Below are positions 2,618 through 61,999 of a DNA stretch of 64,000 nucleotides, piece by piece (positions within the stretch are counted from its first letter, which is position 1; every line of letters begins with the position of its first letter). The stretch covers positions 1 through 64,000 of the IMG/VR virus record IMGVR_UViG_3300044645_002359; one strand, written 5' to 3'. The notes beneath the pieces are model-generated. The model did no database searches. It had not been told where the DNA came from and saw only the letters and a program-made list of their open reading frames with translations. A program made the position numbers and the translations under genes.

Positions 2618-2680
2618 CGGTTAACCGCCCTGAACCGTTCGGTTCACACCCTTGTTTCTGCTCCGCAGAAACGCTATCAT
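2618..2680 (+). promoter_or_regulatory. Class I repeated promoter
   Basis: cggttaaccg; TTGTTT-17-TATCAT; ATG 2687. Confidence 0.8.
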
Positions 2681-2686
2681 AGAGTT

Positions 2687-2953
2687 ATGGAAAGCACTTC
2701 ACGGATGAGACTGAAAGACTGGTAGAATCTTGGGCGTAACGCTCGAGTAGAGGGTGAGAACCAAGCAAGCTGGATTGCTCTTATTCAAGATGATCTGTCT
2801 CAACTAACTCACTCTGACGAAGCCTTTTTGTCAGGACACACCTCGCTATTGTCTTGGAGGCCCCTCTCAGCCTTCTCTCCCAAGATGATTAGCACGGGTC
2901 CCTCTCCCTTAATTCGTCAAGTTTTCGAGAGACCTTTTCGCTTCTTTCTCTGA
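2687..2953 (+). pseudogene. Leaderless hypothetical ORF with in-frame TAG at 2723
   Basis: MESTSRMRLKDW*NLGRNAR... stays open to TGA 2951. Confidence 0.6.
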
Positions 2954-2969
2954 GAAGCCCCATCTATAA

Positions 2970-3040
2970 TCCGGAGTCGTCTAACGGCAGGACACCTCCC
3001 TTTGAAGGAGTTTACATAGGTTCGAATCCTATCTCCGGAA
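2970..3040 (+). tRNA. tRNA-Gln(TTG)
   Basis: Loop ctttgaa; acceptor tccggag/ctccgga. Confidence 0.9.
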
Positions 3041-3135
3041 TTGTCTGAAAGTAAACTTAATTCAAGTGAGTTTACTTTTCAGCAAGCCCCTATAATAGGG
3101 ATGTAACGCGGGTGAGTGTTTCGCTCCGCGAACTC

Positions 3136-3183
3136 AGATGATTCAGCGATTGACTCCTTCGAACTGGAAAAACAATCATCTAG
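3136..3183 (+). ncRNA. Helix-CAGC(A/G)A module, type 1
   Basis: agatgatt-cagcga...aaaac-aatcatct. Confidence 0.65.
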
Positions 3184-3470
3184 CCTAATTTTGTTAGAAA
3201 TTTTCAAAACACAGTAAAGTCCCAAAGTAATCGGAACAGGCATCAGGGTTCAAATCTATAAGTAAATGCTGATAGGCGTATTGAACCTACGTTGATAAGG
3301 ACGGTATCGAAACCCCGCCTTCTTATTGAAAATAGATTCTTTTGCTTCCAGGTTCGATTCCCTGGTTGGGGCATTGCCCACGGTTGGGTCTGGGTAATAT
3401 GACTTAGGGTATAAATGGGAGACCATCACCTCAAAGTTTCATTACCCTTGGACTCAAACCAAAGCAGCAT

Positions 3471-3543
3471 GGTGGTAGTAGCCAAGCGGTAAGGCATCTG
3501 GTTGTGAGCCAGAGTAGCGCGGGTTCGATTCCCGTCTATCACC
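3471..3543 (+). tRNA. tRNA-His(GTG)
   Basis: tctgg-ttgtgag-ccaga, G-1. Confidence 0.9.
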
Positions 3544-3582
3544 CTTTGCTGACGCAAACATTGCGAAAGCATCACACAAAAT

Positions 3583-3664
3583 GCGGGTATAGCTCAGCGG
3601 TAGAGCACTTGTCTTCCAAACAAGAGGCGAATAGTTCACGCAGGTTCGAATCCTGTTACCCGCT
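3583..3664 (+). tRNA. tRNA-Gly(TCC) with extended variable loop
   Basis: cttgt-cttccaa-acaag; 15-nt variable region. Confidence 0.85.
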
Positions 3665-3693
3665 TTTTTCTCTCACGAGAAAATTTCAAATTT

Positions 3694-3764
3694 ACGTAGA
3701 TGGTGTAGCGGTAACATGACGGTCTCCAAAACCGTTGTCCACAGTTCAATCCTGTGTCTGCGTG
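3694..3764 (+). tRNA. tRNA-Trp(CCA)
   Basis: Loop ctccaaa. Confidence 0.9.
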
Positions 3765-3784
3765 TCTTTCGCTTCGCGAAAGTT

Positions 3785-3847
3785 CGGCTAACCGTCCCCA
3801 ACGGTTCGGTTCTCCCCCTTGTTTCTGCCCCGCAGAAACGCTATGAT
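3785..3847 (+). promoter_or_regulatory. Class I repeated promoter
   Basis: cggctaaccg; TTGTTT-17-TATGAT; GTG 3854. Confidence 0.8.
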
Positions 3848-3932
3848 ATAAGGGTGGTTGAGAGAGGGCTTCGCCCTCACCTCCTCCCTGGTTTTTGCGA
3901 AAGCAAAAAAGCAACTTGACAATTTAAACATT

Positions 3933-4013
3933 GCCCGTCTGGCGGAATGGTAGACGCACCTGACTTAAAATCAGGCGCCGAAAGGCGTGGGAGTTCAAGT
4001 CTCCCGATGGGCA
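3933..4013 (+). tRNA. tRNA-Leu(TAA)
   Basis: Loop cttaaaa, variable arm. Confidence 0.9.
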
Positions 4014-4348: not shown

Positions 4349-4478
4349 TTTTTGCTATCGCAAAAACCCAAAGCCATGGGTAACTGATGGCACAAAGGGT
4401 GTGAGTCCCGAGGGGAAAGCAACTGCAATTGTAATACCCGGCCCTTCAAAGTAACTTGCAGGTTTCTTCATAGGGATT

Positions 4479-4548
4479 TGGACGTTAGCTCAACTGGAAG
4501 AGCGCCGCCCACCGGTGGAGGTTGCGGGTTCGAGTCCCGTGCGTTCAA
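4479..4548 (+). tRNA. tRNA-like gene with 4-nt anticodon loop
   Basis: ccgcc-cacc-ggtgg; D and T arms and acceptor intact. Confidence 0.7.
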
Positions 4549-4609
4549 TTTGCCCTCAGGTGAAAGTCTAGGGGTAATAATTACCGGGAGATCAAACCCT
4601 GGTAAAAAA

Positions 4610-5874: not shown

Positions 5875-5937
5875 CGGTAAGCCGACCCTTCCGGTTCGGT
5901 TCTCCGGCTTGTTTCTGCCTCGCAGAAACGCTATGAT
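5875..5937 (+). promoter_or_regulatory. Class I repeated promoter
   Basis: cggtaagccg; TTGTTT-17-TATGAT; ATG 5944. Confidence 0.85.
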
Positions 5938-5943
5938 ATTAAC

Positions 5944-6261
5944 ATGGAAATCACCGCTTCGTCATCGCCCCTTTCCCCCGCTGAGATGGTCATGGGTTTC
6001 GTACACCGGGCTCGCTCGTCCAGCTTTGCGGGCGGCTTCTCTGAGCGCGACTTTGCTGCTCATGTGCTTCTCTCCGCAGTTGATCAAGTTGATTTGGATC
6101 AATATTCGCGGGAAGCTTTTCTGGCGATCGCCGATGAATTGAGTCGCTATCGCCCGCTTGATATGGTCGAGGAACTGTCAGCCCGTCTTCGCCGTCGGGA
6201 AGCTAGCTTGCAGGCACGTCGTTTACGTCGTCAGCAGCGTATCGCAGACAGAGTAGAATAA
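5944..6261 (+). CDS. Hypothetical protein (leaderless)
   Basis: ATG 6 nt after -10. Confidence 0.7.
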   Translation: MEITASSSPLSPAEMVMGFVHRARSSSFAGGFSERDFAAHVLLSAVDQVDLDQYSREAFLAIADELSRYRPLDMVEELSARLRRREASLQARRLRRQQRIADRVE

Positions 6262-7136: not shown

Positions 7137-7199
7137 CGGTTAACCGCCCCGAAACGTTCGGTTCTCACCCTTGGCAAGCCCTGGCAAAGACCCTATAGT
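7137..7199 (+). promoter_or_regulatory. Class I repeated promoter
   Basis: cggttaaccg; TTGGCA-17-TATAGT; ATG 7206. Confidence 0.8.
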
Positions 7200-7205
7200 T
7201 AGAGC

Positions 7206-7382
7206 ATGAACGAAGACACCAAGCGGCGGATCCTTGAAACTCTCCAAGATGAGCGGGAGGCTCGGTCCAAGGCCCTTGCCTCGCGAGGTTTCACGAGTGA
7301 GCAAGCCCACGCTTACATCGCGGGATACACGGAATCCGTTCTCAACCGCATCCAAGAGCTTCTCTCTGATTCAATCTTGTGA
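7206..7382 (+). CDS. Hypothetical 58-aa protein (leaderless)
   Basis: MNEDTKRRILETLQ...; read manually. Confidence 0.65.
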   Translation: MNEDTKRRILETLQDEREARSKALASRGFTSEQAHAYIAGYTESVLNRIQELLSDSIL

Positions 7383-16231: not shown

Positions 16232-16624
16232 ATGGAAAGCACTACCTCTCGCCGTGGAATCCTCTGGTTGTCTGACCCAGACCAAGAGTTTCGGGTGTGC
16301 ACAACCTTTGCCAACGCTGCACGCCACTTGCATGTGACTTTGCAGTTTGGGATTTATGAGAACGAGATTCCTGCCGGGATTTTGGGTCACACTTTCTCTG
16401 TTCGGGCTACAAGCATCTGTTACAATACCCGAATTCAAGCTTTGCGCGTAGAACTGCCTACCGAACTCCAAGACGTTTGTCAAAACGAAAACCCTCATAT
16501 GACAATCTCGATGATTCCTGGAGTTCGCCCCGTTGAGTCAAACGAGATGTTGCAGGGTTCCTATCATTCCGAGTCAGTAGACTTTGAAATGTCTCTCATC
16601 TGCGAATTTTCACCCTTCAACTAA
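16232..16624 (+). CDS. 2H phosphoesterase (tRNA ligase CPD-like)
   Basis: Two HxT motifs: LHVTLQFG and PHMTIS. Confidence 0.7.
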   Translation: MESTTSRRGILWLSDPDQEFRVCTTFANAARHLHVTLQFGIYENEIPAGILGHTFSVRATSICYNTRIQALRVELPTELQDVCQNENPHMTISMIPGVRPVESNEMLQGSYHSESVDFEMSLICEFSPFN

Positions 16625-17781: not shown

Positions 17782-18042
17782 ATGGTAAAATCAGCCCGAA
17801 GACGCCACCATGCCATGCGCCTGAGGAATAAATGGCTGAGGCTGCTACACAACCTGAGCCCTGAGCGCGGTCTTGACTGCATCACCTTTGGCAAGGTCTA
17901 TAGCAAAGACCCAATTGATTGCGGAAACCCACGGTGCAAACTTTGCTCTTATGCGAAGGTCTTACACAGCAAAGAGAAAAGGTTGCTTGAGAAGAGAGTT
18001 GCCAAGAATGAAACTTTAGAATTTAATAAGGAGGGCGGTTAA
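17782..18042 (+). CDS. Hypothetical basic protein with CxxxxCxxC
   Basis: DCGNPRCKLC. Confidence 0.65.
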   Translation: MVKSARRRHHAMRLRNKWLRLLHNLSPERGLDCITFGKVYSKDPIDCGNPRCKLCSYAKVLHSKEKRLLEKRVAKNETLEFNKEGG

Positions 18043-18098
18043 CCGTCCCGAACCGTTCGGTTCCCACCCTTGTTTCTGCGTTTCAGAAACGCTATAAT
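18036..18098 (+). promoter_or_regulatory. Class I repeated promoter
   Basis: cggttaaccg; TTGTTT-17-TATAAT; ATG 18105. Confidence 0.85.
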
Positions 18099-18104
18099 AT
18101 GATT

Positions 18105-18629
18105 ATGAAGAAACCAACCTACACCATTTCAGCGGTAAACACCGACGGCTCATCCGAGTTTCCTCGTCCCGAATGTCTACCTCAAGCTGGCGATGTCCTT
18201 GTGGTTGAAAAGCCTTTCAGGACTCTGGCTGGTTATGACTATCAAGTTGGTTCTAGGCTGCGTCTTATTGAGCGAACGCTAGATGCCCCTTTTAGACTTC
18301 TCAGTTCTCTTGGTAATTGGGTGGTAGAATGCCCATTTCAAAAGTCCGTATGGACCAATATTGAGCTGATGATTGCTGAGGGGACGTTGAGTTGTGACAG
18401 GGGACCCGAAGCTGGGGAATGGCTACCGATTAGTACCGCTCCAAAAGAATACAAACCTTACTCAATGTTTGTCGTGATTGCTATGGATGTCACCGTTGGC
18501 GCCGCGATCCGCTATACGACAGACCCCTATTGTGTTTACCGCACGGGCGGAACATACGTGAGGTGGCCACACTTTTTTCCTCCAACACATTGGAGGCCAC
18601 TCCCTGATTATAACCCAAAAACCAAATGA
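18105..18629 (+). CDS. Hypothetical protein, DUF551-like C-terminus
   Basis: W..IST.PK...PTHWRPLP. Confidence 0.6.
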   Translation: MKKPTYTISAVNTDGSSEFPRPECLPQAGDVLVVEKPFRTLAGYDYQVGSRLRLIERTLDAPFRLLSSLGNWVVECPFQKSVWTNIELMIAEGTLSCDRGPEAGEWLPISTAPKEYKPYSMFVVIAMDVTVGAAIRYTTDPYCVYRTGGTYVRWPHFFPPTHWRPLPDYNPKTK

Positions 18630-20693: not shown

Positions 20694-20756
20694 CGGTTAA
20701 CCCTCCCGCCCGGTTCGGTTCTCCGGCTTGTTACTGCAACTTAGAAACGCTAAACT
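20694..20756 (+). promoter_or_regulatory. Class I repeated promoter
   Basis: cggttaaccc; TTGTTA-17-TAAACT; ATG 20763. Confidence 0.75.
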
Positions 20757-20762
20757 TATTCC

Positions 20763-21050
20763 ATGAAAGACGAACAACACGCCACTTTAAGCCACGAAAC
20801 AACATCGGAGGAGCGTCCTATTTGCTTCCTTAAAATTGAACTGGCCCCGAAAGATGGCCGCCCTATTTGGGCTAAGGGGTATATTTGGGGTGATACTTCT
20901 GGTTCCTTGGGCACTTTTTGTGTATGGGCCTATTGGGACGGAAATGTTTGGAAAGAAGCTGGAGTAGAGAACTCAAGCCTTAATTCCCGTCACCTGTATG
21001 AATACATGCCCCTTACACTGAACTCTGCTGTCAGAGATATACCAATCTAG
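20763..21050 (+). CDS. Hypothetical protein (leaderless)
   Basis: ATG 6 nt after -10. Confidence 0.65.
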   Translation: MKDEQHATLSHETTSEERPICFLKIELAPKDGRPIWAKGYIWGDTSGSLGTFCVWAYWDGNVWKEAGVENSSLNSRHLYEYMPLTLNSAVRDIPI

Positions 21051-21474: not shown

Positions 21475-22083
21475 ATGACCAACTTCCCACCCACAATCCC
21501 ACAAATTAAAGCACTTCGTGAAAAAACTGGGGCAGGTATGATCCTTTGTAAGGAAGCACTTATTAACTCCAAAGGCGATGAAGCAGGGGCAATCACTTGG
21601 CTGCGCCAAAAGGGTATTGTCTTAGCTGATGGTAAAATTGGTAGGGCTGCCAAAGAAGGGATCATCTCCAGCTATATCCATACAGGTGGCAAGATCGGTG
21701 TACTCATCGAAGTGAATTGCGAAACTGATTTTGTGGCAAGATCTGGGCCATTCCAAGAGTTCGTTCGCACTTTGGCAATGCAAATCGCAGCTTGCCCCTC
21801 CGTTAATTACATCTCAATTACCGAAATTCCAGAGTCTATTCTTTTGGACGAGACACGGATCGAAATGAGCAAGGAAGATCTTGCAAAGAAACCCGAAGCA
21901 ATGCGTGGCAAAATTGTTGAAGGTAGGGTAGCCAAACGTTTCAAGGAAATGTCTTTGATGGACCAACCATATATCAAAGATGGCACAATGACTATCGAGA
22001 CTTATGTCAAAAACTTCGCTGCTACGGTTGGCGAAAACATCGTTGTGAAGCGATTCGCTCGCTTCGTTCTCGGCAACTCCTGA
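21475..22083 (+). CDS. tsf: Translation elongation factor Ts, short cyanobacterial type
   Basis: IKALREKTGAGM..CKEAL...EVNCETDFVAR...GENIVVKRFARF. Confidence 0.95.
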   Translation: MTNFPPTIPQIKALREKTGAGMILCKEALINSKGDEAGAITWLRQKGIVLADGKIGRAAKEGIISSYIHTGGKIGVLIEVNCETDFVARSGPFQEFVRTLAMQIAACPSVNYISITEIPESILLDETRIEMSKEDLAKKPEAMRGKIVEGRVAKRFKEMSLMDQPYIKDGTMTIETYVKNFAATVGENIVVKRFARFVLGNS

Positions 22084-22811: not shown

Positions 22812-22874
22812 CGGTCACCCGAACCGAACCGGTCGGTTTGCACCCTTGTTTCTGCAGCGCAGAAACGGTTTAAT
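22812..22874 (+). promoter_or_regulatory. Class I repeated promoter
   Basis: cggtcacccg; TTGTTT-17-TTTAAT; GTG 22881. Confidence 0.75.
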
Positions 22875-22937
22875 ATTAGAGTGAAAGACTCCGAAGCCCT
22901 GTTGACACGACTCGTCGAGGGTAAATACTAAGTTCCT

Positions 22938-23450: not shown

Positions 23451-23513
23451 CGGGTAATCGACCGAAGACTTTCGGCTTGCACCCTTGTCTTTGCAACTCA
23501 AAACTACTATACT
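23451..23513 (+). promoter_or_regulatory. Class I repeated promoter (divergent)
   Basis: TTGTCT-17-TATACT; ATG 23520. Confidence 0.7.
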
Positions 23514-23519
23514 ATAAGT

Positions 23520-23759
23520 ATGAATTACAACGAGTTCCTCAAGCGTTTTTGGGATAGTGCCGGAGAGGCGCGGCATAGTTTAAGGGTAGGGCAGCACCTT
23601 ATGAATGAACTTGGCAAGGTGAGCCCCATTGCTTACAGCCGAATTCCCTCAGAGTTAGACCCGTTCTACAACGATCTTCTTCTCCCCAACTTCCTCAAAT
23701 ACCTGAAAGCAAACTGGAACGACCTGACCGATCCACTCAATTCTCCCGAACGCAAATGA
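23520..23759 (+). CDS. Hypothetical protein (leaderless)
   Basis: LRVGQHLMN motif. Confidence 0.7.
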   Translation: MNYNEFLKRFWDSAGEARHSLRVGQHLMNELGKVSPIAYSRIPSELDPFYNDLLLPNFLKYLKANWNDLTDPLNSPERK

Positions 23760-24660: not shown

Positions 24661-24664
24661 TTGC

Positions 24665-24683
24665 GGGGGCTTCGGCCCCCCTT
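24665..24683 (+). terminator. GC hairpin with TTCG loop after tmRNA
   Basis: gggggc-ttcg-gccccc-tt. Confidence 0.7.
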
Positions 24684-24701
24684 AAACCAATTAGAAACAA
24701 A

Positions 24702-33029: not shown

Positions 33030-33092
33030 CGGAAAACCGAACGAAAACCTTCGGTTTTCACCCTTGTTTTCGCTCACCGAAAACGGTATGAT
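33030..33092 (+). promoter_or_regulatory. Class I repeated promoter (ATA at +1)
   Basis: cggaaaaccg; TTGTTT-17-TATGAT. Confidence 0.75.
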
Positions 33093-33120
33093 TACTACAT
33101 AAGCGAAACGAAACTCCCAG

Positions 33121-34429: not shown

Positions 34430-34467
34430 CCCTGCTCGACAACCCAAGTCAAACCTCTTAACAAACA

Positions 34468-40442: not shown

Positions 40443-41082
40443 ATGGAACAAAATCTGCGCCACTACCTGATCGACTGGCTTAACGAGTGGGGCTACAATG
40501 CCCTGGAAGAGTTGGCCGAATTTGACATCCGCGTTGCTCGCGATGAGCGTTACCCGAACCTCTTCAACCTGAAGTACGGCAGCGTGATGGCGGACAAGTC
40601 GCTGCCGATCGTTCGCGCTTGTCGTGGTGCTGTGGTTGAGCGTGTTGATAACGATGGCGACCACTCGCCGTACTACCGCCTGGTAGCGTATGCTTTCGAT
40701 CGTTTCTTCAACGTCGGCGAAGGTTATTGTCACGAACTAGATTGGTCGCATACCAAGGTTTATGAGAAGTACGATGGTTGCTTACATGCTGAGACTAAGG
40801 TAGAAACCTCAAAAGGTACAAACTATCAAAGAGATTTGCGAGAAGCCTGATGAAGTCAAAGTTTACGGCTTCGACCACAAATCTGAAGAGAAAGTAGAAG
40901 TTCCCATTGAGGCTGTCTCTGTCAAACAATGCAAGCCTGACACCCAGTGGTACAAAATCACATTGGAGAACGGAAACACCATCGTTCTAACAGGGAACCA
41001 TAAAGTCTGGGATGAAGTGTCCCATTCCTACATCAGAGTAGATCAACTTTCTGGAGAAGAGGAACTAAAGGAGTTTACTTGA
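40443..41082 (+). CDS. RNA ligase 1 N-extein plus N-half of split intein (frameshift at ~40810-40824)
   Basis: CRG...YAFDRFFN..E...YEKYDG|CLHAETKVET...LTGNHKVW...EELKEFT*. Confidence 0.85.
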
Positions 41083-45741: not shown

Positions 45742-46386
45742 ATGAATCCTGGGTCAATCTCCGAAAGCACTCGCGAACTTGTATTTGACTTTACTCGGTG
45801 CGTCAAAGCCGACGGGAGCTTTTATGGTACGTCAGGTAAGTGCCGAAAAGGCTCCGAAGTTGATGCCAAGGAAAAACCCTATAAAGTAGGAGTAACTTGG
45901 GGCAAGTACAATATTCCAACCCCAGGCCACGCTCGCGTTGTCAAGAACCTGCTCAAGAAATCTCAGGTTGTGAACGTGATTATGAGCGGAGCGAAGACCA
46001 ACGTCGACTGGAACTTGCGAAATCTAATGTTTCGCCGAGTGCTCAAGCAACAAGGGGTGGACGTTTCTCGTGTGAAATTCGTTCACGCCTCAAATACCTT
46101 TGAAGCTCTGACAAAGATCATTGATTCTCAAGGTTCGAAAAATGTTCTCCTTGCACTTGGCGAAGATCGTAAGAACTACCTAGATGGACTGACCAAAAAG
46201 TTAGGGATCGGAGGGCAGTTAATCCCTCGTGCCGCTGGGTCGGAAAGTTCAACTATGATGCGTGGGTTGATTGACTCCAAGGACTTCAAAAAGTTAGGAG
46301 AAATATACGGCAATGATCCTTATTTGGTGAAACTGGCTAGAATTATCCGGAACGAAGAGACGAAGAGGGACGGTAAACCGAACTGA
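45742..46386 (+). CDS. DFTRC-family protein with HIGH-type nucleotidyltransferase domain
   Basis: FDFTRCVKADGSFYGTSGKCRKG; GKYNIPTPGHARV...GEDR...SST.MR. Confidence 0.75.
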   Translation: MNPGSISESTRELVFDFTRCVKADGSFYGTSGKCRKGSEVDAKEKPYKVGVTWGKYNIPTPGHARVVKNLLKKSQVVNVIMSGAKTNVDWNLRNLMFRRVLKQQGVDVSRVKFVHASNTFEALTKIIDSQGSKNVLLALGEDRKNYLDGLTKKLGIGGQLIPRAAGSESSTMMRGLIDSKDFKKLGEIYGNDPYLVKLARIIRNEETKRDGKPN

Positions 46387-46433
46387 AGCCTTCGGCTTCC
46401 ACCCTTGTTTTCGCTGAGCGAAAGCGGTATGAT
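46371..46433 (+). promoter_or_regulatory. Class I repeated promoter
   Basis: cggtaaaccg; TTGTTT-17-TATGAT; ATG 46440. Confidence 0.85.
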
Positions 46434-46439
46434 TAATGT

Positions 46440-46763
46440 ATGAAAAGGAAAGTTAAAAAGAGAATCCAAAAACGGCTTCAGAAAAAAGTCTTTGATTTCG
46501 TACACCCGGTAGATCTGAACAAGGTTGTACCTCAAATTGAGAAAAACAAAAGGGCTATTCAGGCTCTTAGGGCTTTACACCTTGCTTACGATTCCGATCG
46601 ACGGAGCGGTAGTGAGACCTACGGGTACTCTAGTTTAGAGAGTATCGAATCTAGCTTAGAGTACATCTGCGATCGCTGGGGCTGTGCATTCCGCTTAACT
46701 TGGCTTCTCGGAGTACCTGAAGCAGTGAGCAACCTGAAACAATTCAACTCATCTTCAAAATGA
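46440..46763 (+). CDS. Hypothetical protein (leaderless)
   Basis: ATG 6 nt after -10. Confidence 0.65.
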   Translation: MKRKVKKRIQKRLQKKVFDFVHPVDLNKVVPQIEKNKRAIQALRALHLAYDSDRRSGSETYGYSSLESIESSLEYICDRWGCAFRLTWLLGVPEAVSNLKQFNSSSK

Positions 46764-48780: not shown

Positions 48781-48815
48781 TATTGCATGAACATGACACG
48801 AGCCTAATCTACAAA

Positions 48816-49940
48816 ATGGCAAACATCGAACGCAAACTTGCATCTGTCCGCAAAGTAACGGACATTCGCCCCATCCCCGACGCTGACGCCATCGAATGCG
48901 CCATTGTAGGTGGTGGTTGGCCCGTGGTAGTGAAAAAGGGAGAATTTCAGGTTGGCGACCTCGCCATCTACTTCGAGATTGATTCCTGGATTCCTCACGA
49001 ACTTGCCCCATTCCTCTCCAAGGGGAAGAAACCAAGGGAGTATAATGGAGTGAAGGGGGAGAGGCTGAAAACTGTCAGGCTCCGTGGTCAAGTCTCCCAG
49101 GGTCTCCTGCTCCGCTTCTCGGACATCTCTCCAAGCTTCTACGTTGTCTCGCTAGCCGAACCTTACGGGGGGAGGGAATTTCTCCGAGTTGATCAGTGCG
49201 TGTGGGAGGAAGGTGAGGACTTCACTCTAGAGTTCGGAATTCAGAAATGGGAAGCTCCTGTCCCAGCTTGCTTGGCTGGTCAAGTTCGCGGGAACTTTCC
49301 TAGCTTCCTCGTGAAGACGGACCAGGAACGTTGTCAGAATGTTGTGGAGGAAATCTTTGAGCGCCATAAGGGTGAAACCTACGAAGTTACTATCAAACTT
49401 GATGGGTCTTCCTGCACGGTCTACGTCAAGGACGGGGAAGTTGGGGTGTGCAGCCGTAACCTTGACCTCAAGGAAACCGAAGGCAATAGTTTCTGGAAGG
49501 CTGCTAGGGATCAGGGCATTATCGATGCTATGCTTGCATACAATGGGAAGACTGGTCACAGTATTGCCTTGCAGTCGGAAACCCTTGGAGAAGGCATCCA
49601 GGGCAACCAGGAAGGAATCAAGGGACAACGCCTATTCCTGTTTGACATCTTCGATATCGACAGCCAAACTTACATGAAGCCAGGGGCCAGAATGAACCTC
49701 TTGGACAAGTACCTAGTTCCATTAGGCGCTGATTTAACCCATACCCCTGTCCTACACCCCGCAATGTGTGTAACTGATAGTTCCGCCAACCTTGATGAGC
49801 TACTAGCGTACGCCGATGGCCCGTCCATGAACCCCAAAGTCAAACGCGAAGGCTTAGTATTCAAGTCCAATGACTCTGAGTTTTCCTTCAAGGCCATTAG
49901 TAATGAATGGCTCTTATCCAAGGGAAAGAAGGGTGGCTGA
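48816..49940 (+). CDS. RNA ligase, Rnl2/DRB0094 family
   Basis: RKLASVRKV...YFEIDS...SQGL...KTDQER...KLDGSS...EGLVFK...FKAISNEWL. Confidence 0.92.
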   Translation: MANIERKLASVRKVTDIRPIPDADAIECAIVGGGWPVVVKKGEFQVGDLAIYFEIDSWIPHELAPFLSKGKKPREYNGVKGERLKTVRLRGQVSQGLLLRFSDISPSFYVVSLAEPYGGREFLRVDQCVWEEGEDFTLEFGIQKWEAPVPACLAGQVRGNFPSFLVKTDQERCQNVVEEIFERHKGETYEVTIKLDGSSCTVYVKDGEVGVCSRNLDLKETEGNSFWKAARDQGIIDAMLAYNGKTGHSIALQSETLGEGIQGNQEGIKGQRLFLFDIFDIDSQTYMKPGARMNLLDKYLVPLGADLTHTPVLHPAMCVTDSSANLDELLAYADGPSMNPKVKREGLVFKSNDSEFSFKAISNEWLLSKGKKGG

Positions 49941-52667: not shown

Positions 52668-52730
52668 CGGTAAACCGACCAAAAACTTTCGGTTCTCCCC
52701 CTTGTGCCTGCAGCGCAGAGACGCTATAGT
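52668..52730 (+). promoter_or_regulatory. Class I repeated promoter
   Basis: cggtaaaccg; TTGTGC-17-TATAGT; ATG 52737. Confidence 0.85.
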
Positions 52731-52736
52731 AATAAT

Positions 52737-53468
52737 ATGAAGAACGTCAATTACGCCTTTATTGGCGACCTCCACTCTCAAATTTCGCCTTTGCGAAAAG
52801 CACTGAACTATTGCAACGAAAACGGATGCGTCCCTGTGCTTTTGGGCGACCTGTTTGACTCGCGCATGGAAACCAGCGATAGCGTAGCTGTCTACAACAC
52901 TGTGCGTCAAGCTGTTGAAAACGGTGCGATTGCTCTGAGAAGCAATCACCAGAACAAGCTGGAGCGTCACGCTCGCGGTAACAACGTTCTGTTGAAAGAA
53001 GGTTTTGATCGCACTGTCCGAGACTTTCAAGAAGCTGGTATCTGCTTGACTGAAGTAGGGCAATGGCTGGAAACTTTCCCGTATGGTATCGCCCTGAGGG
53101 ACTCTCGAGGAGTCGAATACCGCTGCGCCCACGCAATGTTCCCCCGATGGGTTCTCGTTCCTGAAAACTACGATGGGGTTTACCGTGTGAACGAAGTGAC
53201 TCGTAAAGCGAAAGATTACATGCTGTATGGGCCACGCCGTGCTGGTGCGGTCTGGCCTCAAGACCAAACTCGAGTGTTCTGGTGGGAAGAAGAATCGAAT
53301 CGCGATTGGGTTCGTGTCGCGGGCCACTACCACCACATTCACGTGAGCGATAAGAGCCTTGTTCTCGACGGACAGATGGGTGGCAGCACCCAAGAAGGCT
53401 TCGACCCGGCGCAAGCTCGCCTCTGCGTCTGGAACCTCGAAGAGCAAACGCTTACTCAATTCACCTGA
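52737..53468 (+). CDS. Calcineurin-like metallophosphoesterase (paralog B)
   Basis: GDLHSQ...LGDLFD...SNHQ...GHYH. Confidence 0.85.
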   Translation: MKNVNYAFIGDLHSQISPLRKALNYCNENGCVPVLLGDLFDSRMETSDSVAVYNTVRQAVENGAIALRSNHQNKLERHARGNNVLLKEGFDRTVRDFQEAGICLTEVGQWLETFPYGIALRDSRGVEYRCAHAMFPRWVLVPENYDGVYRVNEVTRKAKDYMLYGPRRAGAVWPQDQTRVFWWEEESNRDWVRVAGHYHHIHVSDKSLVLDGQMGGSTQEGFDPAQARLCVWNLEEQTLTQFT

Positions 53469-56624: not shown

Positions 56625-58118
56625 ATGACAACCTTTTTGAACGCACTCGAAAACGAATTCAATACTACGACCACAGCCAACGGCGCAAAAGCCTATAAGT
56701 CCACAGGTTCCAAGAACCTGGACCTTTTCGGGAAGATTGCAGCCTGCCGCAACGACGTTAGCGAAGCAACTCGCCTATTCAACCTTGCTTATGCTGAAGA
56801 CCCTGAGACCGCAACCAGAATCCTGTTCTGGGCACGTGACATTCGCGGTGGCCAGGGTGAGCGTAAGATCTTCCGAGAAGTTTTCAAGGAGCTGGTTCGC
56901 AATGATGCTACAATCGGCGCGAAACTCATTAGTTTGATCCCGCAGTATGGACGCTGGGATGATGTGGTAGCCCTTGAAGGCACCCTAGTTTGGAATGTTG
57001 CACTCGAGGCAATCAAGGCACAGCTGAACGCTGACTTGAACACCGAAGTTGGAAACTCCGTGTCATTGCTTGCGAAATGGCTCCCTTCCATTAACGCCTC
57101 TAGCAAGGAGTCTAAGAGGATTGGCCGCAAGATTGCCGAGGCAATGGGTTGGAATGAGCGTCAATATCGCAAGGCTTTGACTGCTCTTAGGACACAAATC
57201 AAAATTGTCGAACAGGCAATGTGTGCCCGTGAGTGGGATGCCATTGATTATAGCAAGTTGCCTTCTCGTGCAGGCTTCATGTATCGGAAAGCTTTCGCAA
57301 ATCGTGATGGCGACCGTTACCAGTCCTACCTGGATGCAGTTAAAAAAGGTGAAGCAAAGATCAATGCCGGTACTTTGTATCCGTATGACATCGTTGAGAA
57401 GTGTCTCTACAACCAAGAATCCAATGATACTCTAGAAGTAATGTGGAAAGCCCTGCCGAACTTCATGGAGGGCAAGGAATTGAATGGGCTTGTTGTTGCC
57501 GATGTTAGCCGTTCTATGTCAGGCCGTCCAATGGCAGTATCCATCTCTCTGGCGATGTATATCGCAGAGCGTAATACCGGCATCTGGAAGGACAAGTTCC
57601 TAACATTCTCAGGGAATCCTTCTCTACAGACTGTGACTGGCAGTAGCCTTTCAAACAAGGTTCGCAACCTTAGCCGAGCAGATTGGGGCGGTAACACTGA
57701 TATTCAGAAGACGTTTGACCTTATTCTGGATACTGCAGTTCGGAACAACATTCCAGAGTCAGACATGCCCCGCAAACTGATTATTGTCTCAGACATGCAG
57801 TTTGATAACTGTGTTATCATGGGAGGTAATTACTCCGGTCGTATGAGTTATGGCGGAGCCCGAGTCACCAACTACGAAGCAATCCGCATCAAGTACGCTC
57901 AAGCTGGCTACAGCTTGCCCGAAGTTATCTTCTGGAATGTCGATTCCTCAGATAACGTCCCGATGAAGGCACATGATTCCGGTACCGCTCTCGTTAGCGG
58001 TTGCTCTCCGTCAATCCTGACCGCAGTTCTTACCAGAAACGCAATCACCCCATTGTCCCTAATGAGAGATGCTGTTTATACTGAAAGGTATGACGCTGTG
58101 GGTGCGGTCTTTAACTGA
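56625..58118 (+). CDS. TROVE/Ro60-related DUF2828 + vWA protein
   Basis: T.NGA.AY.STG...LDLF...RDIRGG.GER...YGRWDD...AKWLPS...ADVSRSM...SDMQFD...FWNV...SG.SP. Confidence 0.85.
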   Translation: MTTFLNALENEFNTTTTANGAKAYKSTGSKNLDLFGKIAACRNDVSEATRLFNLAYAEDPETATRILFWARDIRGGQGERKIFREVFKELVRNDATIGAKLISLIPQYGRWDDVVALEGTLVWNVALEAIKAQLNADLNTEVGNSVSLLAKWLPSINASSKESKRIGRKIAEAMGWNERQYRKALTALRTQIKIVEQAMCAREWDAIDYSKLPSRAGFMYRKAFANRDGDRYQSYLDAVKKGEAKINAGTLYPYDIVEKCLYNQESNDTLEVMWKALPNFMEGKELNGLVVADVSRSMSGRPMAVSISLAMYIAERNTGIWKDKFLTFSGNPSLQTVTGSSLSNKVRNLSRADWGGNTDIQKTFDLILDTAVRNNIPESDMPRKLIIVSDMQFDNCVIMGGNYSGRMSYGGARVTNYEAIRIKYAQAGYSLPEVIFWNVDSSDNVPMKAHDSGTALVSGCSPSILTAVLTRNAITPLSLMRDAVYTERYDAVGAVFN

Positions 58119-58359: not shown

Positions 58360-58403
58360 TTTAAATAAAGTCAACTTCCCTGGTAGTTCACCGGGGCAAC
58401 AAT

Positions 58404-58520
58404 GGGGAATGGTGCAATGGCAGCACACGTAATTAACGGTTACCTTGGATAAGGTACAGACAGCAATTACAAAAATTCCATTCCACGGACGTGACGGAGG
58501 TTCGATTCCTTCTTCCCCAT
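58404..58520 (+). ncRNA. tRNA body (Gly TCC-like) with CAGCAA hairpin inserted in the anticodon stem
   Basis: D and T arms; gtacctt-ggat-aaggtac-aga-cagcaa; cc-attccac-gg. Confidence 0.7.
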
Positions 58521-59501: not shown

Positions 59502-59521
59502 TTGTTTTTCTTTGAAAACGT

Positions 59522-59570
59522 AGATAGTTCAGCAATTCACCCTAACTCAATAAGGAAAACAACTATCTTG
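59522..59570 (+). ncRNA. Helix-CAGCAA module, type 1
   Basis: agatagtt-cagcaa...cct-aactcaata-agg...aactatct. Confidence 0.7.
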
Positions 59571-59609
59571 CTGAATCTAGTTTCAACAAACTATTTGCGA
59601 AGCAAATAA

Positions 59610-59727
59610 GGGACCGTAGCTCAACTGGTAGAGCGCTAAATAAAAGTTATCTTGTACAAGATACGTCAGCAATTAAAAAATACCTCGTTTAAAGGAGTGG
59701 TTGCAGGTTCGAGTCCTGCCGGTCCCA
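59610..59727 (+). ncRNA. tRNA body (Lys TTT-like) with CAGCAA hairpin between the D and anticodon arms
   Basis: gggaccg/cggtccc; tatcttg-tac-aagata-cgt-cagcaa; cct-cgtttaa-agg. Confidence 0.7.
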
Positions 59728-59970
59728 TTTACCCCAAGTCTAGCCATGAAAATTTCACGGTTGTTACCCTGCTGGCCTGCACAGTGCTAACTCTCTCGCC
59801 AACGTGGGCAAAATACCAGAGTCTAATCACTGGCGCAAACCCGGAGGAAGTTCAAGAAAATGCCTTCAAGAAAAGTATGAGCTATCCGGTGGGCTCTCTC
59901 AAGTGTAGCCAGCGTTGTTCTCAGTGGTGGCATCACGACTGACTTAGCATCAAGAGTAAAAAAGTTTAAC

Positions 59971-60339
59971 ATGACAAATAGTACAACCCCGTTTCACTTG
60001 ACCCAAAGTCACCTGAAACTGCTGAGGAGAATGCACGTAGGTTGGAGCGTCTGTGAGTTTGGTGCTCCCGAGATAGACCCAAAGAGACCATACGGCAACA
60101 GTTGGGTGCTTGGCGACATACACGAGATTTTGACAGGGGAAGACATAGACGAACTAACTGAATCTCAGAAGGAGGAATACAGGCAGTTACACGAAGAAAC
60201 TCAAACAGCCCTCCAGATTATCCTTTCCATGGGCAAGTTTGAGGAAGGCTTGTACATACGGACTAACCCGTACTCTTCCACCTGGGTACCGTACCCACTC
60301 GCGGGCAGAATCGCGGAAAAATCACAAAACGCTACTTAG
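59971..60339 (+). CDS. Conserved phage hypothetical protein
   Basis: GAPEIDPKRPYGNS....DIHEIL. Confidence 0.75.
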   Translation: MTNSTTPFHLTQSHLKLLRRMHVGWSVCEFGAPEIDPKRPYGNSWVLGDIHEILTGEDIDELTESQKEEYRQLHEETQTALQIILSMGKFEEGLYIRTNPYSSTWVPYPLAGRIAEKSQNAT

Positions 60340-60491
60340 TGGGCCAAATCGTAAGACCTCTTTCAGATTTACACCAGACTCTACCAACGAAGCGGGGACA
60401 AGGGCTGCCTTGAACTGCCAGAAACACCGACTTTTTCGGTTTTTGGGGCGAGAACCGGGGGTCAACCGGCTGAGACAGTTTCCAAGAGGTT

Positions 60492-60554
60492 CGGTTACCC
60501 GAACCGGGTGGTTCGGTTCCCCTCCTTGTTTTTGCAGCGCAAAAACGCTATAGT
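60492..60554 (+). promoter_or_regulatory. Class I repeated promoter
   Basis: cggttacccg; TTGTTT-17-TATAGT; ATG 60561. Confidence 0.85.
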
Positions 60555-60560
60555 AAGAGT

Positions 60561-60764
60561 ATGAAAGTTGATCCCTCCACTCAAGTCTCCATCCGCTTTG
60601 ACCCTGTGTCGGTCGAATGGTTTTTGCAAGAAACCGTGAAGGCAGGTGCCTTCAGTTTTCAAGCCACTAAGGTATCCCCGAATTTCTCGAGGCTCTCCGA
60701 GGCTGAAGCTGCTCTGGCTGCTCTGCTTGAAGTGTACGACGCTGCGATGAAAGCCTGCGCCTGA
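60561..60764 (+). CDS. Hypothetical protein (leaderless)
   Basis: ATG 6 nt after -10. Confidence 0.65.
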   Translation: MKVDPSTQVSIRFDPVSVEWFLQETVKAGAFSFQATKVSPNFSRLSEAEAALAALLEVYDAAMKACA

Positions 60765-61020
60765 GCTCAGTGAGTTCGGTAACCCAACCTTTTATTCTTT
60801 CTGAGAAACCGTCCCAGTATGATTATGAAAACTACTAACGCCTCTGAGGAGGCTCTGCTCCTCGCTGGGTTAATGGCGGATTGCGCCATTCGTCTTGTCG
60901 GAGGACAAGACTTAAACGGCACGGTCCCCGCAGCGCACCCGGACGATTTTTCTTACTTTGTCAAACACTTGCGTATTTCAGTAGAGCGGTACAACCGACA
61001 CATCATGTCAATGAACAGCA

Positions 61021-61266
61021 ATGACTAAGCTCCTCTCCCTCGCCGCTCAAGCTACGCTTGATGCTTTCACCGCCGGATGGCTAGACGAGCCCTTGGATCA
61101 GGATCGTTGTCAGTTGGCATCCTCTATTCGCGCCTTAGCAAATCAGCCCCAGGAAGTTCCTGTTCATATTCAGGGCGAGAGCTATTGGCCGTATGTGAAC
61201 GGCATTGAGGCCATGCAAGTGTTCCTCGAGCGCATCGCCGACGAACTAGAGGGCCCCAATGGCTGA
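61021..61266 (+). CDS. Hypothetical protein, paralog of 61259
   Basis: LS.AAQA...IRA.A....IA.ELEG. Confidence 0.7.
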   Translation: MTKLLSLAAQATLDAFTAGWLDEPLDQDRCQLASSIRALANQPQEVPVHIQGESYWPYVNGIEAMQVFLERIADELEGPNG

Positions 61267-61510
61267 CTTATCCCCTGCCGCGCAAGCAGTGGTCAACAAA
61301 ATTGCTGCCAGTGACTGCATTGATCGCGGGGATGTCTACTACCGCCAAGTCGCCACCGTCACCATTCGCGCCGTGGCAGATCTGGTAGTTCCCCTTGAGC
61401 TAGGCCCCCCAGAGCAAGCGCCGATAGACAGCTTCCAGAGGCAAGACCAGCGCAGCAAGACCCGCCGCGAACTCCTTGCCCTAGCCACCGAGTTGGAGGG
61501 CTCCATTTAA
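61259..61510 (+). CDS. Hypothetical protein, paralog of 61021
   Basis: LSPAAQAV...IRAVAD...LATELEG. Confidence 0.7.
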   Translation: MADLSPAAQAVVNKIAASDCIDRGDVYYRQVATVTIRAVADLVVPLELGPPEQAPIDSFQRQDQRSKTRRELLALATELEGSI

Positions 61511-61932
61511 TGTCACCTTGTTCATCCTGCATCCACTATCGAGTGGCCATAGGCAGTCTTCACCCTATCGAAAGGTGGTGCGCTATTTCGGGAGAATGGT
61601 TAAGTGCCAGCGACGTATGGCACAATAATCCTGAGGCACATACCCGAGTTTGGGGAGTCAAAACAAACGACATCCCCGAGTGTAAGTTTACCATGTCTGC
61701 CCGAGAAGTTTGGGAGTTTGACGAATGGCGTGCTTCAAAAATGACTCTATACTATCGGGAGAATCGCGGAGGGTACAAAGGCTTCCACAACGATTTGCGT
61801 AATAGCCACTGGATAGACGCTCTCAACGAAGAAAAAGAGGTGGAATTAAACAACAGTAAGAGGTTCTGGCCCGGTGGTGATCTTCACCACTTTGTACAAC
61901 GACAACCCCGCGCCATCGCCAACGAGCTATAG
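61510..61932 (+). CDS. Hypothetical protein
   Basis: Tiled ORF, N-terminal CxxC. Confidence 0.6.
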   Translation: MSPCSSCIHYRVAIGSLHPIERWCAISGEWLSASDVWHNNPEAHTRVWGVKTNDIPECKFTMSAREVWEFDEWRASKMTLYYRENRGGYKGFHNDLRNSHWIDALNEEKEVELNNSKRFWPGGDLHHFVQRQPRAIANEL

Positions 61933-61935
61933 GGT

Positions 61936-61999
61936 CGGTAAGCCGCCCGTAAACGTTCGGTTCTCCCCCCTTGTTTTCGCACCGCTAAAACGCTAAAAT
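61936..61999 (+). promoter_or_regulatory. Class I repeated promoter (leadered transcript)
   Basis: cggtaagccg; TTGTTT-17-TAAAAT; ATG 62031. Confidence 0.8.

What the first reader, a model, noticed from the sequence alone, without database searches (positions are those of the whole stretch)
2618..61999. Twenty-three copies of a fixed-geometry promoter making leaderless mRNAs
Each copy has TTG(T/G)NN, a 17-nt spacer (16 in two) and a TA(T/A)NNT-type -10. In 19 of 23 an ATG lies exactly 6 nt after the -10 hexamer, and in 2 more a GTG, so transcription should start on the start codon. The exceptions are 33030 (ATA) and 61936 (leadered). Downstream genes mostly have A/C-rich leaders without Shine-Dalgarno sequences. 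Inference: the phage relies on SD-independent, 70S-type initiation, which fits its fMet tRNA, EF-Ts, tmRNA and Pth2-like gene.
Basis: seen in the sequence. Interest (0 to 1): 0.7.

Follow-up and report, generated by a model that had tools for sequence, protein, structure and literature searches.

The report
Hairpin-flanked early promoters making leaderless mRNAs
A large uncultured freshwater phage, probably of cyanobacteria, repeats a rigid ~70-90-base promoter cassette whose predicted transcription start is the A of the first gene's ATG, so most of its early operons should begin with mRNAs that have no leader and no ribosome-binding site.

Summary
I found exactly 23 sites in the window: 19 with ATG, 2 with GTG, one ATA and one AGT. 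Nine more lie further along the 201-kb contig. All are on the + strand and intergenic, and none lies beyond 114 kb.

The repeat starts 34 nt upstream of the -35 with conserved hairpin-forming blocks. The 17-nt spacer is itself a conserved 8-bp/3-nt-loop inverted repeat with compensatory changes. The second codon is also constrained.

In related IMG/VR phage contigs the same promoter is followed by an ATG or by a 16-26-nt SD-less leader. The base 7 nt after the -10 is a purine in every copy, which places the start site independently of the ATG.

Leaderless expression is therefore well supported for 17 of the 23 window sites. Four start codons, including both GTGs, open only 6-21-codon ORFs, and two of those cassettes precede tRNA genes. 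Two sites have leaders.

No start site has been mapped. The 70S mechanism and the link to EF-Ts and tmRNA are inference, and no Pth2 was found. The closest known thing is the PeSL promoter/stem-loop cassette of T4-like phages. This is a leaderless variant of it.

The parts
2618..2689 (+). Cassette; TTG at 2652, ATG(+1) at 2687 opens only 12 codons; tRNA-Gln follows at 2970
3785..3856 (+). Cassette; TTG at 3819, GTG(+1) at 3854 opens 21 codons; tRNA-Leu follows at 3932, so probably a tRNA-cluster promoter
5875..5946 (+). Cassette; ATG(+1) at 5944 opens a 105-codon ORF with no upstream in-frame start
7137..7208 (+). Diverged cassette (TTGGCA, TATAGT); ATG(+1) at 7206, 58 codons
12256..12327 (+). 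Diverged cassette (TTGGCC, TATAGT); ATG(+1) at 12325, 98 codons; geometry kept in the orthologue in L016
13074..13145 (+). Cassette with the TCGC/GCGA spacer-stem variant; ATG(+1) at 13143, 64 codons
16163..16234 (+). Cassette; ATG(+1) at 16232, 130 codons (tRNA-ligase CPD-like). The alternative TTG at 16148 would read through the cassette. The orthologue in L016 carries two compensatory stem changes
18036..18107 (+). Cassette with a consensus TATAAT; ATG(+1) at 18105, 174 codons. The in-frame ATG at 18099 lies in the discriminator, upstream of the predicted start
20694..20765 (+). Cassette with a degenerate stem and TAAACT; ATG(+1) at 20763, 95 codons; heads the unit that contains EF-Ts (21475-22083)
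22812..22883 (+). Cassette with -10 TTTAAT; GTG(+1) at 22881 opens 16 codons; the real gene starts at 22938 (57-nt leader)
23451..23522 (+). Cassette (TTGTCT, TATACT); ATG(+1) at 23520, 79 codons
24108..24179 (+). Cassette; ATG(+1) at 24177, 80 codons, then the permuted tmRNA at 24423-24732. One related contig has ACG in place of the ATG
33030..33101 (+). Cassette with ATA at +1; first ATG at 33121 (22-nt leader); the same arrangement is in L036
36905..36976 (+). Cassette; ATG(+1) at 36974, 203 codons
39658..39729 (+). Cassette; ATG(+1) at 39727, 221 codons
40375..40445 (+). Diverged cassette with a 16-nt spacer and TATAAT; ATG(+1) at 40443, 135 codons (Rnl1-like fragment)
46371..46442 (+). 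Cassette (TCGC/GCGA variant); ATG(+1) at 46440, 107 codons
48718..48789 (+). Cassette; ATG(+1) at 48787 opens only 6 codons; the RNA ligase gene starts at ATG 48816 in another frame (29-nt leader)
52668..52739 (+). Cassette; ATG(+1) at 52737, 243 codons
54816..54886 (+). Cassette with a 16-nt spacer; ATG(+1) at 54884, 117 codons
58720..58791 (+). Cassette (TCGC/GCGA variant); ATG(+1) at 58789, 147 codons
60492..60563 (+). Cassette (TTGC/GCAA variant); ATG(+1) at 60561, 67 codons
61936..62008 (+). Cassette with AGT at +1; gene ATG at 62031 (25-nt A/C-rich leader)

Best explanation
These are the early promoters of a large myovirus of a cyanobacterium, read by the host RNA polymerase with its primary sigma-70-type factor. 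Each copy is a rigid cassette. It starts with conserved hairpin-forming blocks 34 nt upstream of the -35, followed by a C-rich tract. Then come TTGTTT (-35), a 17-nt spacer that is itself an 8-bp stem with a 3-nt loop, TATrrT (-10), a 6-nt A/T-rich discriminator and a pyrimidine-purine-pyrimidine start element. In this phage lineage the purine is usually the A of the first gene's ATG. The first cistron of most early units would therefore be made as a leaderless mRNA and translated from its 5'-terminal AUG. Later cistrons use SD-less, A-rich intergenic leaders. What the sequence shows: the motif, its geometry, its strand and intergenic placement, its conservation in relatives, the invariant purine, and ORFs that start exactly at that ATG. 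What is inferred: that host RNAP uses the site, that transcription starts on the A, that initiation is of the leaderless (70S or IF2/fMet-tRNA-driven) kind, and that the units are early. The hairpins most likely act in read-through RNA from the upstream unit as attenuators or 3'-end protectors, as shown for PeSL cassettes of T4-like phages. That part is the least certain.
For: Count, geometry and chance level. All 32 copies are intergenic, face the genes and head units of 1-15 genes. 23 of 32 copies (17 of 23 in the window) have an ATG(+1) opening an ORF of at least 45 codons (at least 58 in the window), mostly with no upstream in-frame start. Two such proteins align to Pfam domains from the very N-terminus: AAA_33 residue 8 to profile position 3, and an exonuclease residue 7 to profile position 5. 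In 17 related IMG/VR contigs the position 7 nt after the -10 is a purine in all 93 cassettes found (92/92 in the subset with enough flank for base counts). In that subset -1 is a pyrimidine in 75/92 and +2 is a pyrimidine in 71/92. This holds whether an ATG or a leader follows. It matches the Y-1 R+1 Y+2 start element reported to fix the start site across bacteria (PMC12641261). The leadered copies have leaders tightly clustered at 16-26 nt, which fits the same start point. Orthologous genes keep the ATG(+1) geometry at 80-95 % DNA identity. The 23 real leaderless candidates all use ATG, and both GTG sites lead to trivial ORFs. The second codon is AAA, GAA, AAC, AAG or AAT in 22/23, against 61/240 other genes, p = 2e-11. 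No phage RNAP or sigma domain was found in the 201 kb. The motif is absent from 185,579 prokaryote genomes. Host assignment: TerL is 58 % identical to Synechococcus phage S-CBWM1; the 16 best EF-Ts homologues are almost all labelled cyanobacterial, at 54-59 % identity; the tmRNA is permuted. S-CBWM1 has a related cassette of hairpin plus TTTACA-N17-TAAGCT, with a leader. Spacer hairpin: compensatory pairs CG 14/UA 12 and UA 18/CG 8; 101 distinct spacers fold at a mean of -6.4 against -2.5 kcal/mol for shuffles; z-scores range from -1.8 to -5.4.
Against: No transcription start has been mapped. The only RNA run holding this DNA gave two internal contigs. The -35 matches TTGACA in only 3 of 6 positions, so a generic E. 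coli-type scan flags just 2 of the 7 cassettes in 12-26 kb and is not above chance overall. Five ATG/GTG(+1) codons open only 6-21-codon ORFs, so a start codon at +1 is not always a gene start. One relative has ACG instead of the ATG at the tmRNA-linked cassette. The record is about 71 % complete, so a phage sigma or RNAP could lie in the missing part. Read-through transcripts from upstream units would also carry these ATGs internally, behind an A/U-rich stretch. Leaderless translation may therefore not be the only route.
Confidence: 0.7

Rival explanations
1. The cassette is mainly an RNA element, such as a terminator, a processing site or a 3'-end stabiliser, inside long polycistronic transcripts. 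The -35/-10 likeness is secondary. The A/U-rich 'TATGAT + 6 nt' acts as an S1-type, SD-independent ribosome landing pad at a fixed distance from an internal AUG.
For: The hairpins show compensatory changes, and in some copies UUCG- and GNRA-type loops, which points to RNA-level structure. All genes lie on one strand, so read-through is likely. The 12 nt before the ATG are A/U-rich, and the host group is reported to use S1-dependent initiation (PMC5607370).
Against: In relatives the same motif is followed by 16-26-nt leaders, so its distance to the AUG is not what is conserved. What is conserved is TTG-N20-TAnnnT and a purine 7 nt later. Two cassettes precede tRNA clusters with no gene to translate. 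No U-tract follows any of the hairpins, whereas the late region does use canonical T-run terminators.
Confidence: 0.1
2. The promoter is read by a phage-encoded or phage-modified polymerase or sigma factor, which would explain the long conserved flanks and the spacer hairpin. The hairpin recalls the promoters of the phage N4 virion RNA polymerase.
For: Conservation extends about 35 nt upstream of the -35 and through the spacer, far beyond what sigma-70 needs. The -35 is TTGTTT rather than TTGACA. The record is about 71 % complete.
Against: No T7/N4-type RNAP, RpoB-like or sigma-70 region 2 or region 4 domain was found in the 201 kb. The TTG / 17 nt / TATrrT / 6 nt / purine layout is the canonical housekeeping-sigma geometry. 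The related isolate S-CBWM1 uses TTTACA-N17-TAAGCT behind the same hairpin. Leaderless starts would still follow under this rival.
Confidence: 0.1
3. The spacer palindrome is a DNA operator for a dimeric phage regulator that switches all early promoters off, or on, together. It is not a nucleic-acid hairpin.
For: A palindrome centred between the -35 and -10 is the classic position for a repressor. The stem sequence is conserved while the 3-nt centre is free. The upstream blocks sit at a fixed 34-nt distance, as DNA-level recognition would require.
Against: Both arms change together (CTGC/GCAG, TCGC/GCGA, TTGC/GCAA, TTCC/GGAA). Some variants shift the centre by half a base and have 4-nt GNRA-like loops. 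An orthologous promoter carries two compensatory pair changes. A single protein reading specific bases would not tolerate this.
Confidence: 0.15
4. The ATG at +1 is there because the cassette is a recombination module of the PeSL type. It is copied together with its start codon and first codons and captures ORFs at that point. Leaderless expression is then a by-product, not the selected function.
For: Several cassettes share 9-12 nt after the ATG, for example 2687 and 16232, and four copies begin ATGAACGA. Cassette 2652 carries such a stub but no gene. Homology breakpoints against relatives fall in cassettes 12/168 times against 2.7 % expected. Contigs of related strains join different cassette copies.
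Against: The breakpoint test is confounded because intergenic DNA diverges faster, and the joints may be mapping effects of a repeat. A sister lineage keeps the cassette but mostly with leaders, so the ATG is not an obligatory part of the module. This rival is compatible with the main explanation.
Confidence: 0.2

Closest known systems
PeSL (promoter-early stem-loop) cassettes of T4-like phages RB49/phi1, T4/PST and KVP40/nt-1 (PMC2839356, PMC4122927)
   Same: Both are repeated intergenic cassettes in the early or plastic part of a large myovirus. Both have a sigma-70-like -35/N17/-10 promoter combined with a stem-loop that most often lies between the -35 and -10. Sequence is conserved beyond the hexamers, and the cassettes are linked to gene-content differences between relatives.
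   Different: PeSLs end with a Shine-Dalgarno sequence and then the start codon. Here there is no leader at all in most copies. This cassette has extra conserved hairpin blocks at a fixed 34 nt upstream, a C-rich tract instead of an A/T-rich one, and much tighter geometry. The phage is not T4-like by its terminase. Terminator activity and recombination are not shown here.
Leaderless phage mRNAs: lambda cI from PRM, P2 gene V, and the middle/late genes of Thermus phage phiYS40 (from my own knowledge; Brock et al. 2008 is cited in PMC5312081)
   Same: Transcription starts on the A of the AUG, and translation depends on a 5'-terminal AUG rather than an SD.
   Different: In lambda and P2 it is a single regulatory gene. 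In phiYS40 it is the middle and late classes, from promoters lacking a -35, in a host where leaderless mRNAs are common. Here it is the early class, from full -35/-10 promoters, in a host group where only a few percent of start sites are near the start codon.
Hairpin-plus-promoter repeats of Synechococcus phage S-CBWM1, the nearest cultured relative
   Same: It shares the GC-rich CGG-N4-CCG hairpin block just upstream of a -35/N17/-10 promoter, repeated at least 10 times on the gene strand. The terminase is 58 % identical.
   Different: In S-CBWM1 the hairpin abuts the -35 (TTTACA). The -10 is TAAGCT or TAAAGT, a second palindrome follows the -10, and the genes have leaders of about 20 nt. There is no ATG(+1) geometry in that genome.
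Phage N4 early promoters (DNA hairpin with a 5-7-bp stem and 3-nt loop, read by the virion RNAP; from my own knowledge)
   Same: A short stem with a 3-nt loop lies inside the promoter.
   Different: N4 promoters have no -35/-10 and need a giant virion RNAP. No such polymerase domain is present here, and the hexamers and their spacing fit sigma-70.

Membership tests
Sigma-70-type (housekeeping sigma) promoter | -35 hexamer resembling TTGACA | tested here: inconclusive
   TTG is near-invariant but the rest is TTT (TTGTTT, 3 of 6). A generic scan needing 4 of 6 misses most copies.
Sigma-70-type (housekeeping sigma) promoter | -10 hexamer TATAAT-like with A2 and T6, and a 17 +/- 1 bp spacer | tested here: met
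   TATGAT, TATAGT or TATAAT in most copies. The spacer is 17 nt in 30 of 32 and 16 nt in 2.
Sigma-70-type (housekeeping sigma) promoter | Purine start about 7 nt after the -10, within a Y-R-Y start element | tested here: met
   +1 is a purine in 32/32 own copies and in all 93 cassettes found in relatives. In the 92 with enough flank for base counts, -1 is a pyrimidine in 75 (30/32 own). Element as defined in PMC12641261.
Sigma-70-type (housekeeping sigma) promoter | Intergenic and co-oriented with the downstream genes | tested here: met
   All 32 copies are intergenic and on the gene strand.
Sigma-70-type (housekeeping sigma) promoter | Experimentally mapped primary 5' end or promoter activity | not testable with these tools
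   Only one metatranscriptome run holds the DNA, and it gave two internal contigs. No reads at the cassettes.
Leaderless mRNA | Transcription start within 0-5 nt of the start codon | not testable with these tools
   Predicted from promoter geometry only. The A of the ATG is the 7th base after the -10.
Leaderless mRNA | AUG (not GUG or UUG) at the 5' end that opens a genuine ORF | tested here: met
   This holds for 17 of 23 window copies and 23 of 32 overall. Both GTG copies open trivial ORFs. Pfam domains start at residues 7-8 in two products.
PeSL cassette | Strong sigma-70-like early promoter with a stem-loop between or overlapping the -35 and -10 | tested here: met
   An 8-bp stem with a 3-nt loop lies in the spacer, with compensatory variants. 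Definition from PMC2839356.
PeSL cassette | Shine-Dalgarno sequence and start codon at the 3' end of the cassette | tested here: not met
   There is no leader or SD in most copies. The ATG sits at the predicted +1.
PeSL cassette | The stem-loop terminates or attenuates upstream transcription | not testable with these tools
   No U-tract follows the hairpins. The function is untested.
PeSL cassette | Cassettes lie at the boundaries of gene insertions, deletions or replacements between close relatives | tested here: inconclusive
   Breakpoints fall in cassettes 12/168 times against 2.7 % expected, p = 0.002, but the test is confounded. Joints between copies are seen in contigs of related strains.
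N4-type hairpin promoter | Read by a phage virion RNA polymerase, with no -35/-10 | tested here: not met
   No single-subunit RNAP domain was found (the control genomes also lack it, so the absence is weakly shown). Clear -35/-10 hexamers are present.

The most novel reading that the evidence does not exclude
One lineage of large freshwater cyanophages has moved nearly all of its early transcription units onto a self-contained, ribosome-binding-site-free expression module made of insulating RNA hairpins, a promoter and a start codon at +1. A sister lineage keeps the same promoter with 16-26-nt leaders. The phage's own initiator-like tRNA would then help push host ribosomes toward 5'-terminal-AUG initiation early in infection. 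That would amount to a translational takeover strategy and a ready-made gene-capture device.
Probability: 0.25. Interest if true: 0.75.

Novelty: new variant of a known kind. Interest (0 to 1): 0.6.

Why it matters
If the start sites map to the ATGs, this would be a phage in which leaderless mRNAs are the rule for the first gene of early operons. About 70 % of 32 promoters would be leaderless, in a host group where such mRNAs are a small minority. That offers a natural system for asking how cyanobacterial ribosomes handle 5'-terminal AUGs. A sister lineage uses the same promoter with short leaders and would serve as a built-in control. The cassette is also a compact (about 40 nt core), insulated, RBS-free expression part that could be tried in cyanobacterial engineering. 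For annotation, the motif fixes 23 start codons, for example 18105 rather than 18099 and 16232 rather than 16148. It also marks the early/late boundary near 114 kb.

Tried and rejected
- **Public RNA data.** One metatranscriptome run held 6 % of the words of 16-22 kb, and none was listed for 22.8-25.1 kb. Laying it gave two contigs inside the radical-SAM gene and short diverged pieces, so nothing on 5' ends.
- **Near-identity search in the phage collection.** No match.
- **RNAalifold on the 32 cassettes.** It found only a 3-bp helix, because the upstream blocks pair in different registers. I tested explicit helices instead. The proposed closing helix (59 % paired) and hairpins 1 and 2 (62-73 %) are not convincing as one common structure. 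Only the spacer hairpin is.
- **Rfam.** No family covers the cassette.
- **Generic sigma-70 and terminator scan.** Not above chance and blind to TTGTTT.
- **ATG as part of the promoter signal.** Rejected, because relatives carry GTT, AGC, AGT or ATA there with the purine kept.
- **Host-borne motif or prophage.** Rejected: 0 matches in 185,579 genomes.
- **psbA as a host marker.** Absent from the 201 kb. The host was inferred from EF-Ts and TerL instead.
- **Pth and Pth2.** Not found even at E <= 10 for PF01981.
- **First pattern search in S-CBWM1.** I may have miscounted the Ns, so I repeated it in a script.

Full report
**What the window is.** The window is the first 64 kb of a single 201,260-bp virus contig. 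IMG/VR classes it as linear and about 71 % complete. It comes from lake-water metagenomes. All large ORFs are on the + strand.

The contig encodes myovirus parts: tail sheath, portal, protease, baseplate wedge and terminase. It carries 35 tRNA genes and a permuted tmRNA. Its terminase is closest to that of Synechococcus phage S-CBWM1, at 58 % identity. Its EF-Ts gene (21475-22083) has its 16 best homologues almost all labelled cyanobacterial, at 54-59 % identity, before identity drops to 51 % or less elsewhere. A cyanobacterial host, probably a freshwater picocyanobacterium, is therefore a well-based inference. It is not proven, and no psbA is present.

**The observation.** They have the stated make-up: 19 ATG, 2 GTG (3819, 22846), ATA at 33064 and AGT at 61971, with 16-nt spacers at 40409 and 54850.

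The full pattern with the ATG occurs 17 times against 0.09 expected from dinucleotide shuffles. Nine more copies lie at 68-114 kb. None is on the minus strand and none lies beyond 114,114. All 32 are intergenic and head units of 1-15 genes or tRNA genes.

The repeat is longer and more rigid than two hexamers.
- It begins with a CGG-N4-CCG block exactly 34 nt (35 in two copies) upstream of the TTG. This block never occurs without the promoter.
- Next come a second pairing block around TTCGG and a C-rich tract (TCnCaCCC) that abuts the -35.
- The 17-nt spacer, together with the last four bases of the -35, forms an inverted repeat, GTTTCTGC-nnn-GCAGAAAC. Both arms change together (CTGC/GCAG, TCGC/GCGA, TTGC/GCAA). 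Two pairs split CG 14/UA 12 and UA 18/CG 8 among the 32 copies.
- In 101 distinct spacers from this and related phages the mean folding energy is -6.4 kcal/mol, against -2.5 for shuffles.
- An orthologous promoter in a related contig carries two compensatory pair changes. Other variants have 4-nt GNRA-like loops.
- The upstream blocks fold, with z-scores of -1.8 to -5.4, but not in one common register. Their conserved feature may be sequence as much as structure.
- Downstream, the second codon is AAA, GAA, AAC, AAG or AAT in 22 of 23 leaderless candidates, against 61 of 240 other genes (p = 2e-11).

**Is the ATG the transcription start?** This cannot be shown with the data available. The one RNA run that holds this DNA gave only two internal contigs. 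The comparative evidence is nevertheless strong.

The exact core of the cassette occurs in 17 IMG/VR contigs of 9-279 kb and in none of 185,579 prokaryote genomes. A weight-matrix scan of the fetched stretches finds 93 further distinct cassettes. In every one of them the base 7 nt after the -10 is a purine. It is followed by TG in only 43 of them. In the 92 with enough flank to count bases, the preceding base is a pyrimidine in 75 and the following base a pyrimidine in 71.

This is the pyrimidine-purine-pyrimidine 'start element' recently reported to set the start site across bacteria (PMC12641261). It is conserved here whether or not a start codon sits on it. Where no ATG is present, the first long ORF begins after a leader tightly clustered at 16-26 nt (mode 18). 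These leaders are A/C-rich and mostly without SD. So the ATG is not part of the promoter signal, and the same start point explains both designs.

The two designs sort by lineage. Contigs close to the window (80-95 % DNA identity) have ATG at 23 of 27 cassettes. A more distant lineage, which includes a 277-kb contig, has it at roughly one in seven. The cultured relative S-CBWM1 has a related cassette, with the same GC-rich hairpin abutting TTTACA-N17-TAAGCT. It always has a leader of about 20 nt.

**Are the ATGs gene starts?** For 17 of the 23 window sites (23 of 32 overall) the ATG opens an ORF of 45-243 codons (58-243 in the window), usually with a stop codon and no other start upstream. Two products align to Pfam domains from residues 7-8 onward, which leaves no room for a later start. 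Orthologues keep the geometry.

The exceptions matter.
- 2687 (12 codons) and 3854 (GTG, 21 codons) precede tRNA genes.
- 22881 (GTG, 16 codons) and 48787 (6 codons) precede genes that start 57 and 29 nt further on.
- 33064 and 61971 have 22- and 25-nt leaders.
- The 14-codon ORF at 68288 is ATA in a relative, and the ATG of the tmRNA-linked cassette is ACG in one relative.

All credible leaderless genes use ATG. From my own knowledge, this fits the known strong requirement of leaderless translation for AUG.

The other genes do lack SD sequences. SD-like matches of 4 nt or more occur upstream of 23 % of 264 genes, the same as at random positions. The leaders are A 38, C 24, G 16, T 22 %. This is also reported for picocyanobacteria themselves, which are thought not to rely on SD. 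There only 6-8 % of start sites lie within 10 nt of a start codon (PMC5607370). Synechococcus elongatus has 19 leaderless transcripts (PMC6091082).

Only the first cistron of each early unit would be leaderless. The region beyond 114 kb uses another motif, GGGTAAA(A/G), 19-80 nt before start codons and often behind canonical T-run terminators. Late genes therefore have leaders.

EF-Ts, tmRNA and an initiator-like tRNA (C1:C72 mismatch) are present. No Pth or Pth2 was detectable. From my own knowledge of E. coli work, leaderless initiation is favoured by initiator tRNA and IF2 and opposed by IF3. The initiator tRNA therefore has a plausible link, and EF-Ts and tmRNA do not.

**Mechanism and rivals.** The most likely reading is that host RNAP with its primary sigma factor starts on the A of the ATG and the 5'-terminal AUG is translated without a leader. 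No phage RNAP or sigma domain was found in the 201 kb, though 29 % of the genome is missing.

The hairpins most likely act in read-through RNA as attenuators or 3'-end protectors. This was shown for PeSL cassettes, where the stem-loop also most often lies between the -35 and -10 (PMC2839356; PMC4122927). Against a classical terminator, none of the hairpins is followed by a U-tract.

A DNA operator in the spacer is a live alternative, but it fits the compensatory changes poorly. PeSL-like shuffling is hinted at. Some cassettes share the first 9-12 coding bases, and homology breakpoints are enriched in cassettes (12/168 against 2.7 %). Contigs of related strains join different cassette copies. 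Both tests are confounded.

**Comparison and novelty.** The cassette works like a PeSL but fails one defining feature, the SD and leader, and it sits in a non-T4-like cyanophage clade. Leaderless phage genes are known, but not as the standard design of a phage's early promoters. I found no paper on leaderless cyanophage transcripts in the library searched. I rate it a new variant of a known kind: real, clean and testable, but resting on prediction until 5' ends are mapped.

Noticed in passing
window 58403-58520 and 59610-59727, next to the ORF at 56625-58118: Two 118-nt tRNA-like genes have intact acceptor, D and T arms, but a 58-nt insert replaces the anticodon arm (Rfam tRNA, 41.5 and 50.1 bits; ARAGORN does not call them). 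They follow a 497-aa DUF2828/DUF7788 protein. The layout recalls bacterial Ro-like proteins with tRNA-like Y RNAs (from memory). Intron-containing tRNAs are the alternative.
   Followed up: partly
G000 114-201 kb; in the window at 22919 and 52097: A second promoter-like motif, GGGTAAA(A/G), occurs 42 times on the + strand and 16 on the - strand. About 22 copies are intergenic, 19-80 nt before start codons, and often sit just after a GC-rich hairpin with a T-run. This is a candidate middle or late promoter, and those genes have leaders.
   Followed up: partly
L044-L050 (Synechococcus phage S-CBWM1, NC_048106): The cultured relative carries at least 10 co-oriented repeats of a GC-rich CGG-N4-CCG hairpin directly followed by TTTACA-N17-TAAGCT/TAAAGT, a second palindrome (CTGACT..AGTCAG) and a leader of about 20 nt. 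This is a leadered cousin of the cassette.
   Followed up: partly
window 16232-16624, 40443-40850, 48816-49940; G000 71000-71461: A scattered RNA-repair gene set: tRNA-ligase CPD-like, Rnl1-like fragment, RNA ligase with a PHA02142 OB domain, and an AAA_33 kinase. Several are first genes of cassette units. This fits a tRNA-rich phage that repairs cleaved tRNAs.
   Followed up: no
window 24177-24732; L010: The permuted (two-piece) tmRNA lies directly behind an 80-codon ORF driven by cassette 24142. In one related contig that ORF's ATG is ACG, so the unit may chiefly serve the tmRNA.
   Followed up: no
window 21475-22083: The EF-Ts gene is short (202 aa; Pfam EF_TS profile positions 78-203 only). 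It is most like cyanobacterial EF-Ts at 54-59 % identity.
   Followed up: partly
window 2165-2237 and 4478-4549: ARAGORN calls two tRNAs with abnormal anticodon loops, a 4-base 'ttcg' and a 2-base 'ac' anticodon. They could be frameshift-suppressor-like or mis-called.
   Followed up: no
window 33440-35970 and 31669-32607: An NAD-salvage pair, a PRPP-synthetase-like gene and a nicotinamide phosphoribosyltransferase, sits behind the leadered cassette 33064. An SLH-domain protein lies just upstream.
   Followed up: no
window 2687-2698 and 16232-16243; also 7206, 39727, G000 68288 and 71000: Different cassettes share the first 9-12 bases after the ATG (ATGGAAAGCACT; ATGAACGA). This suggests cassettes were copied together with a stub of coding sequence.
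   Followed up: partly
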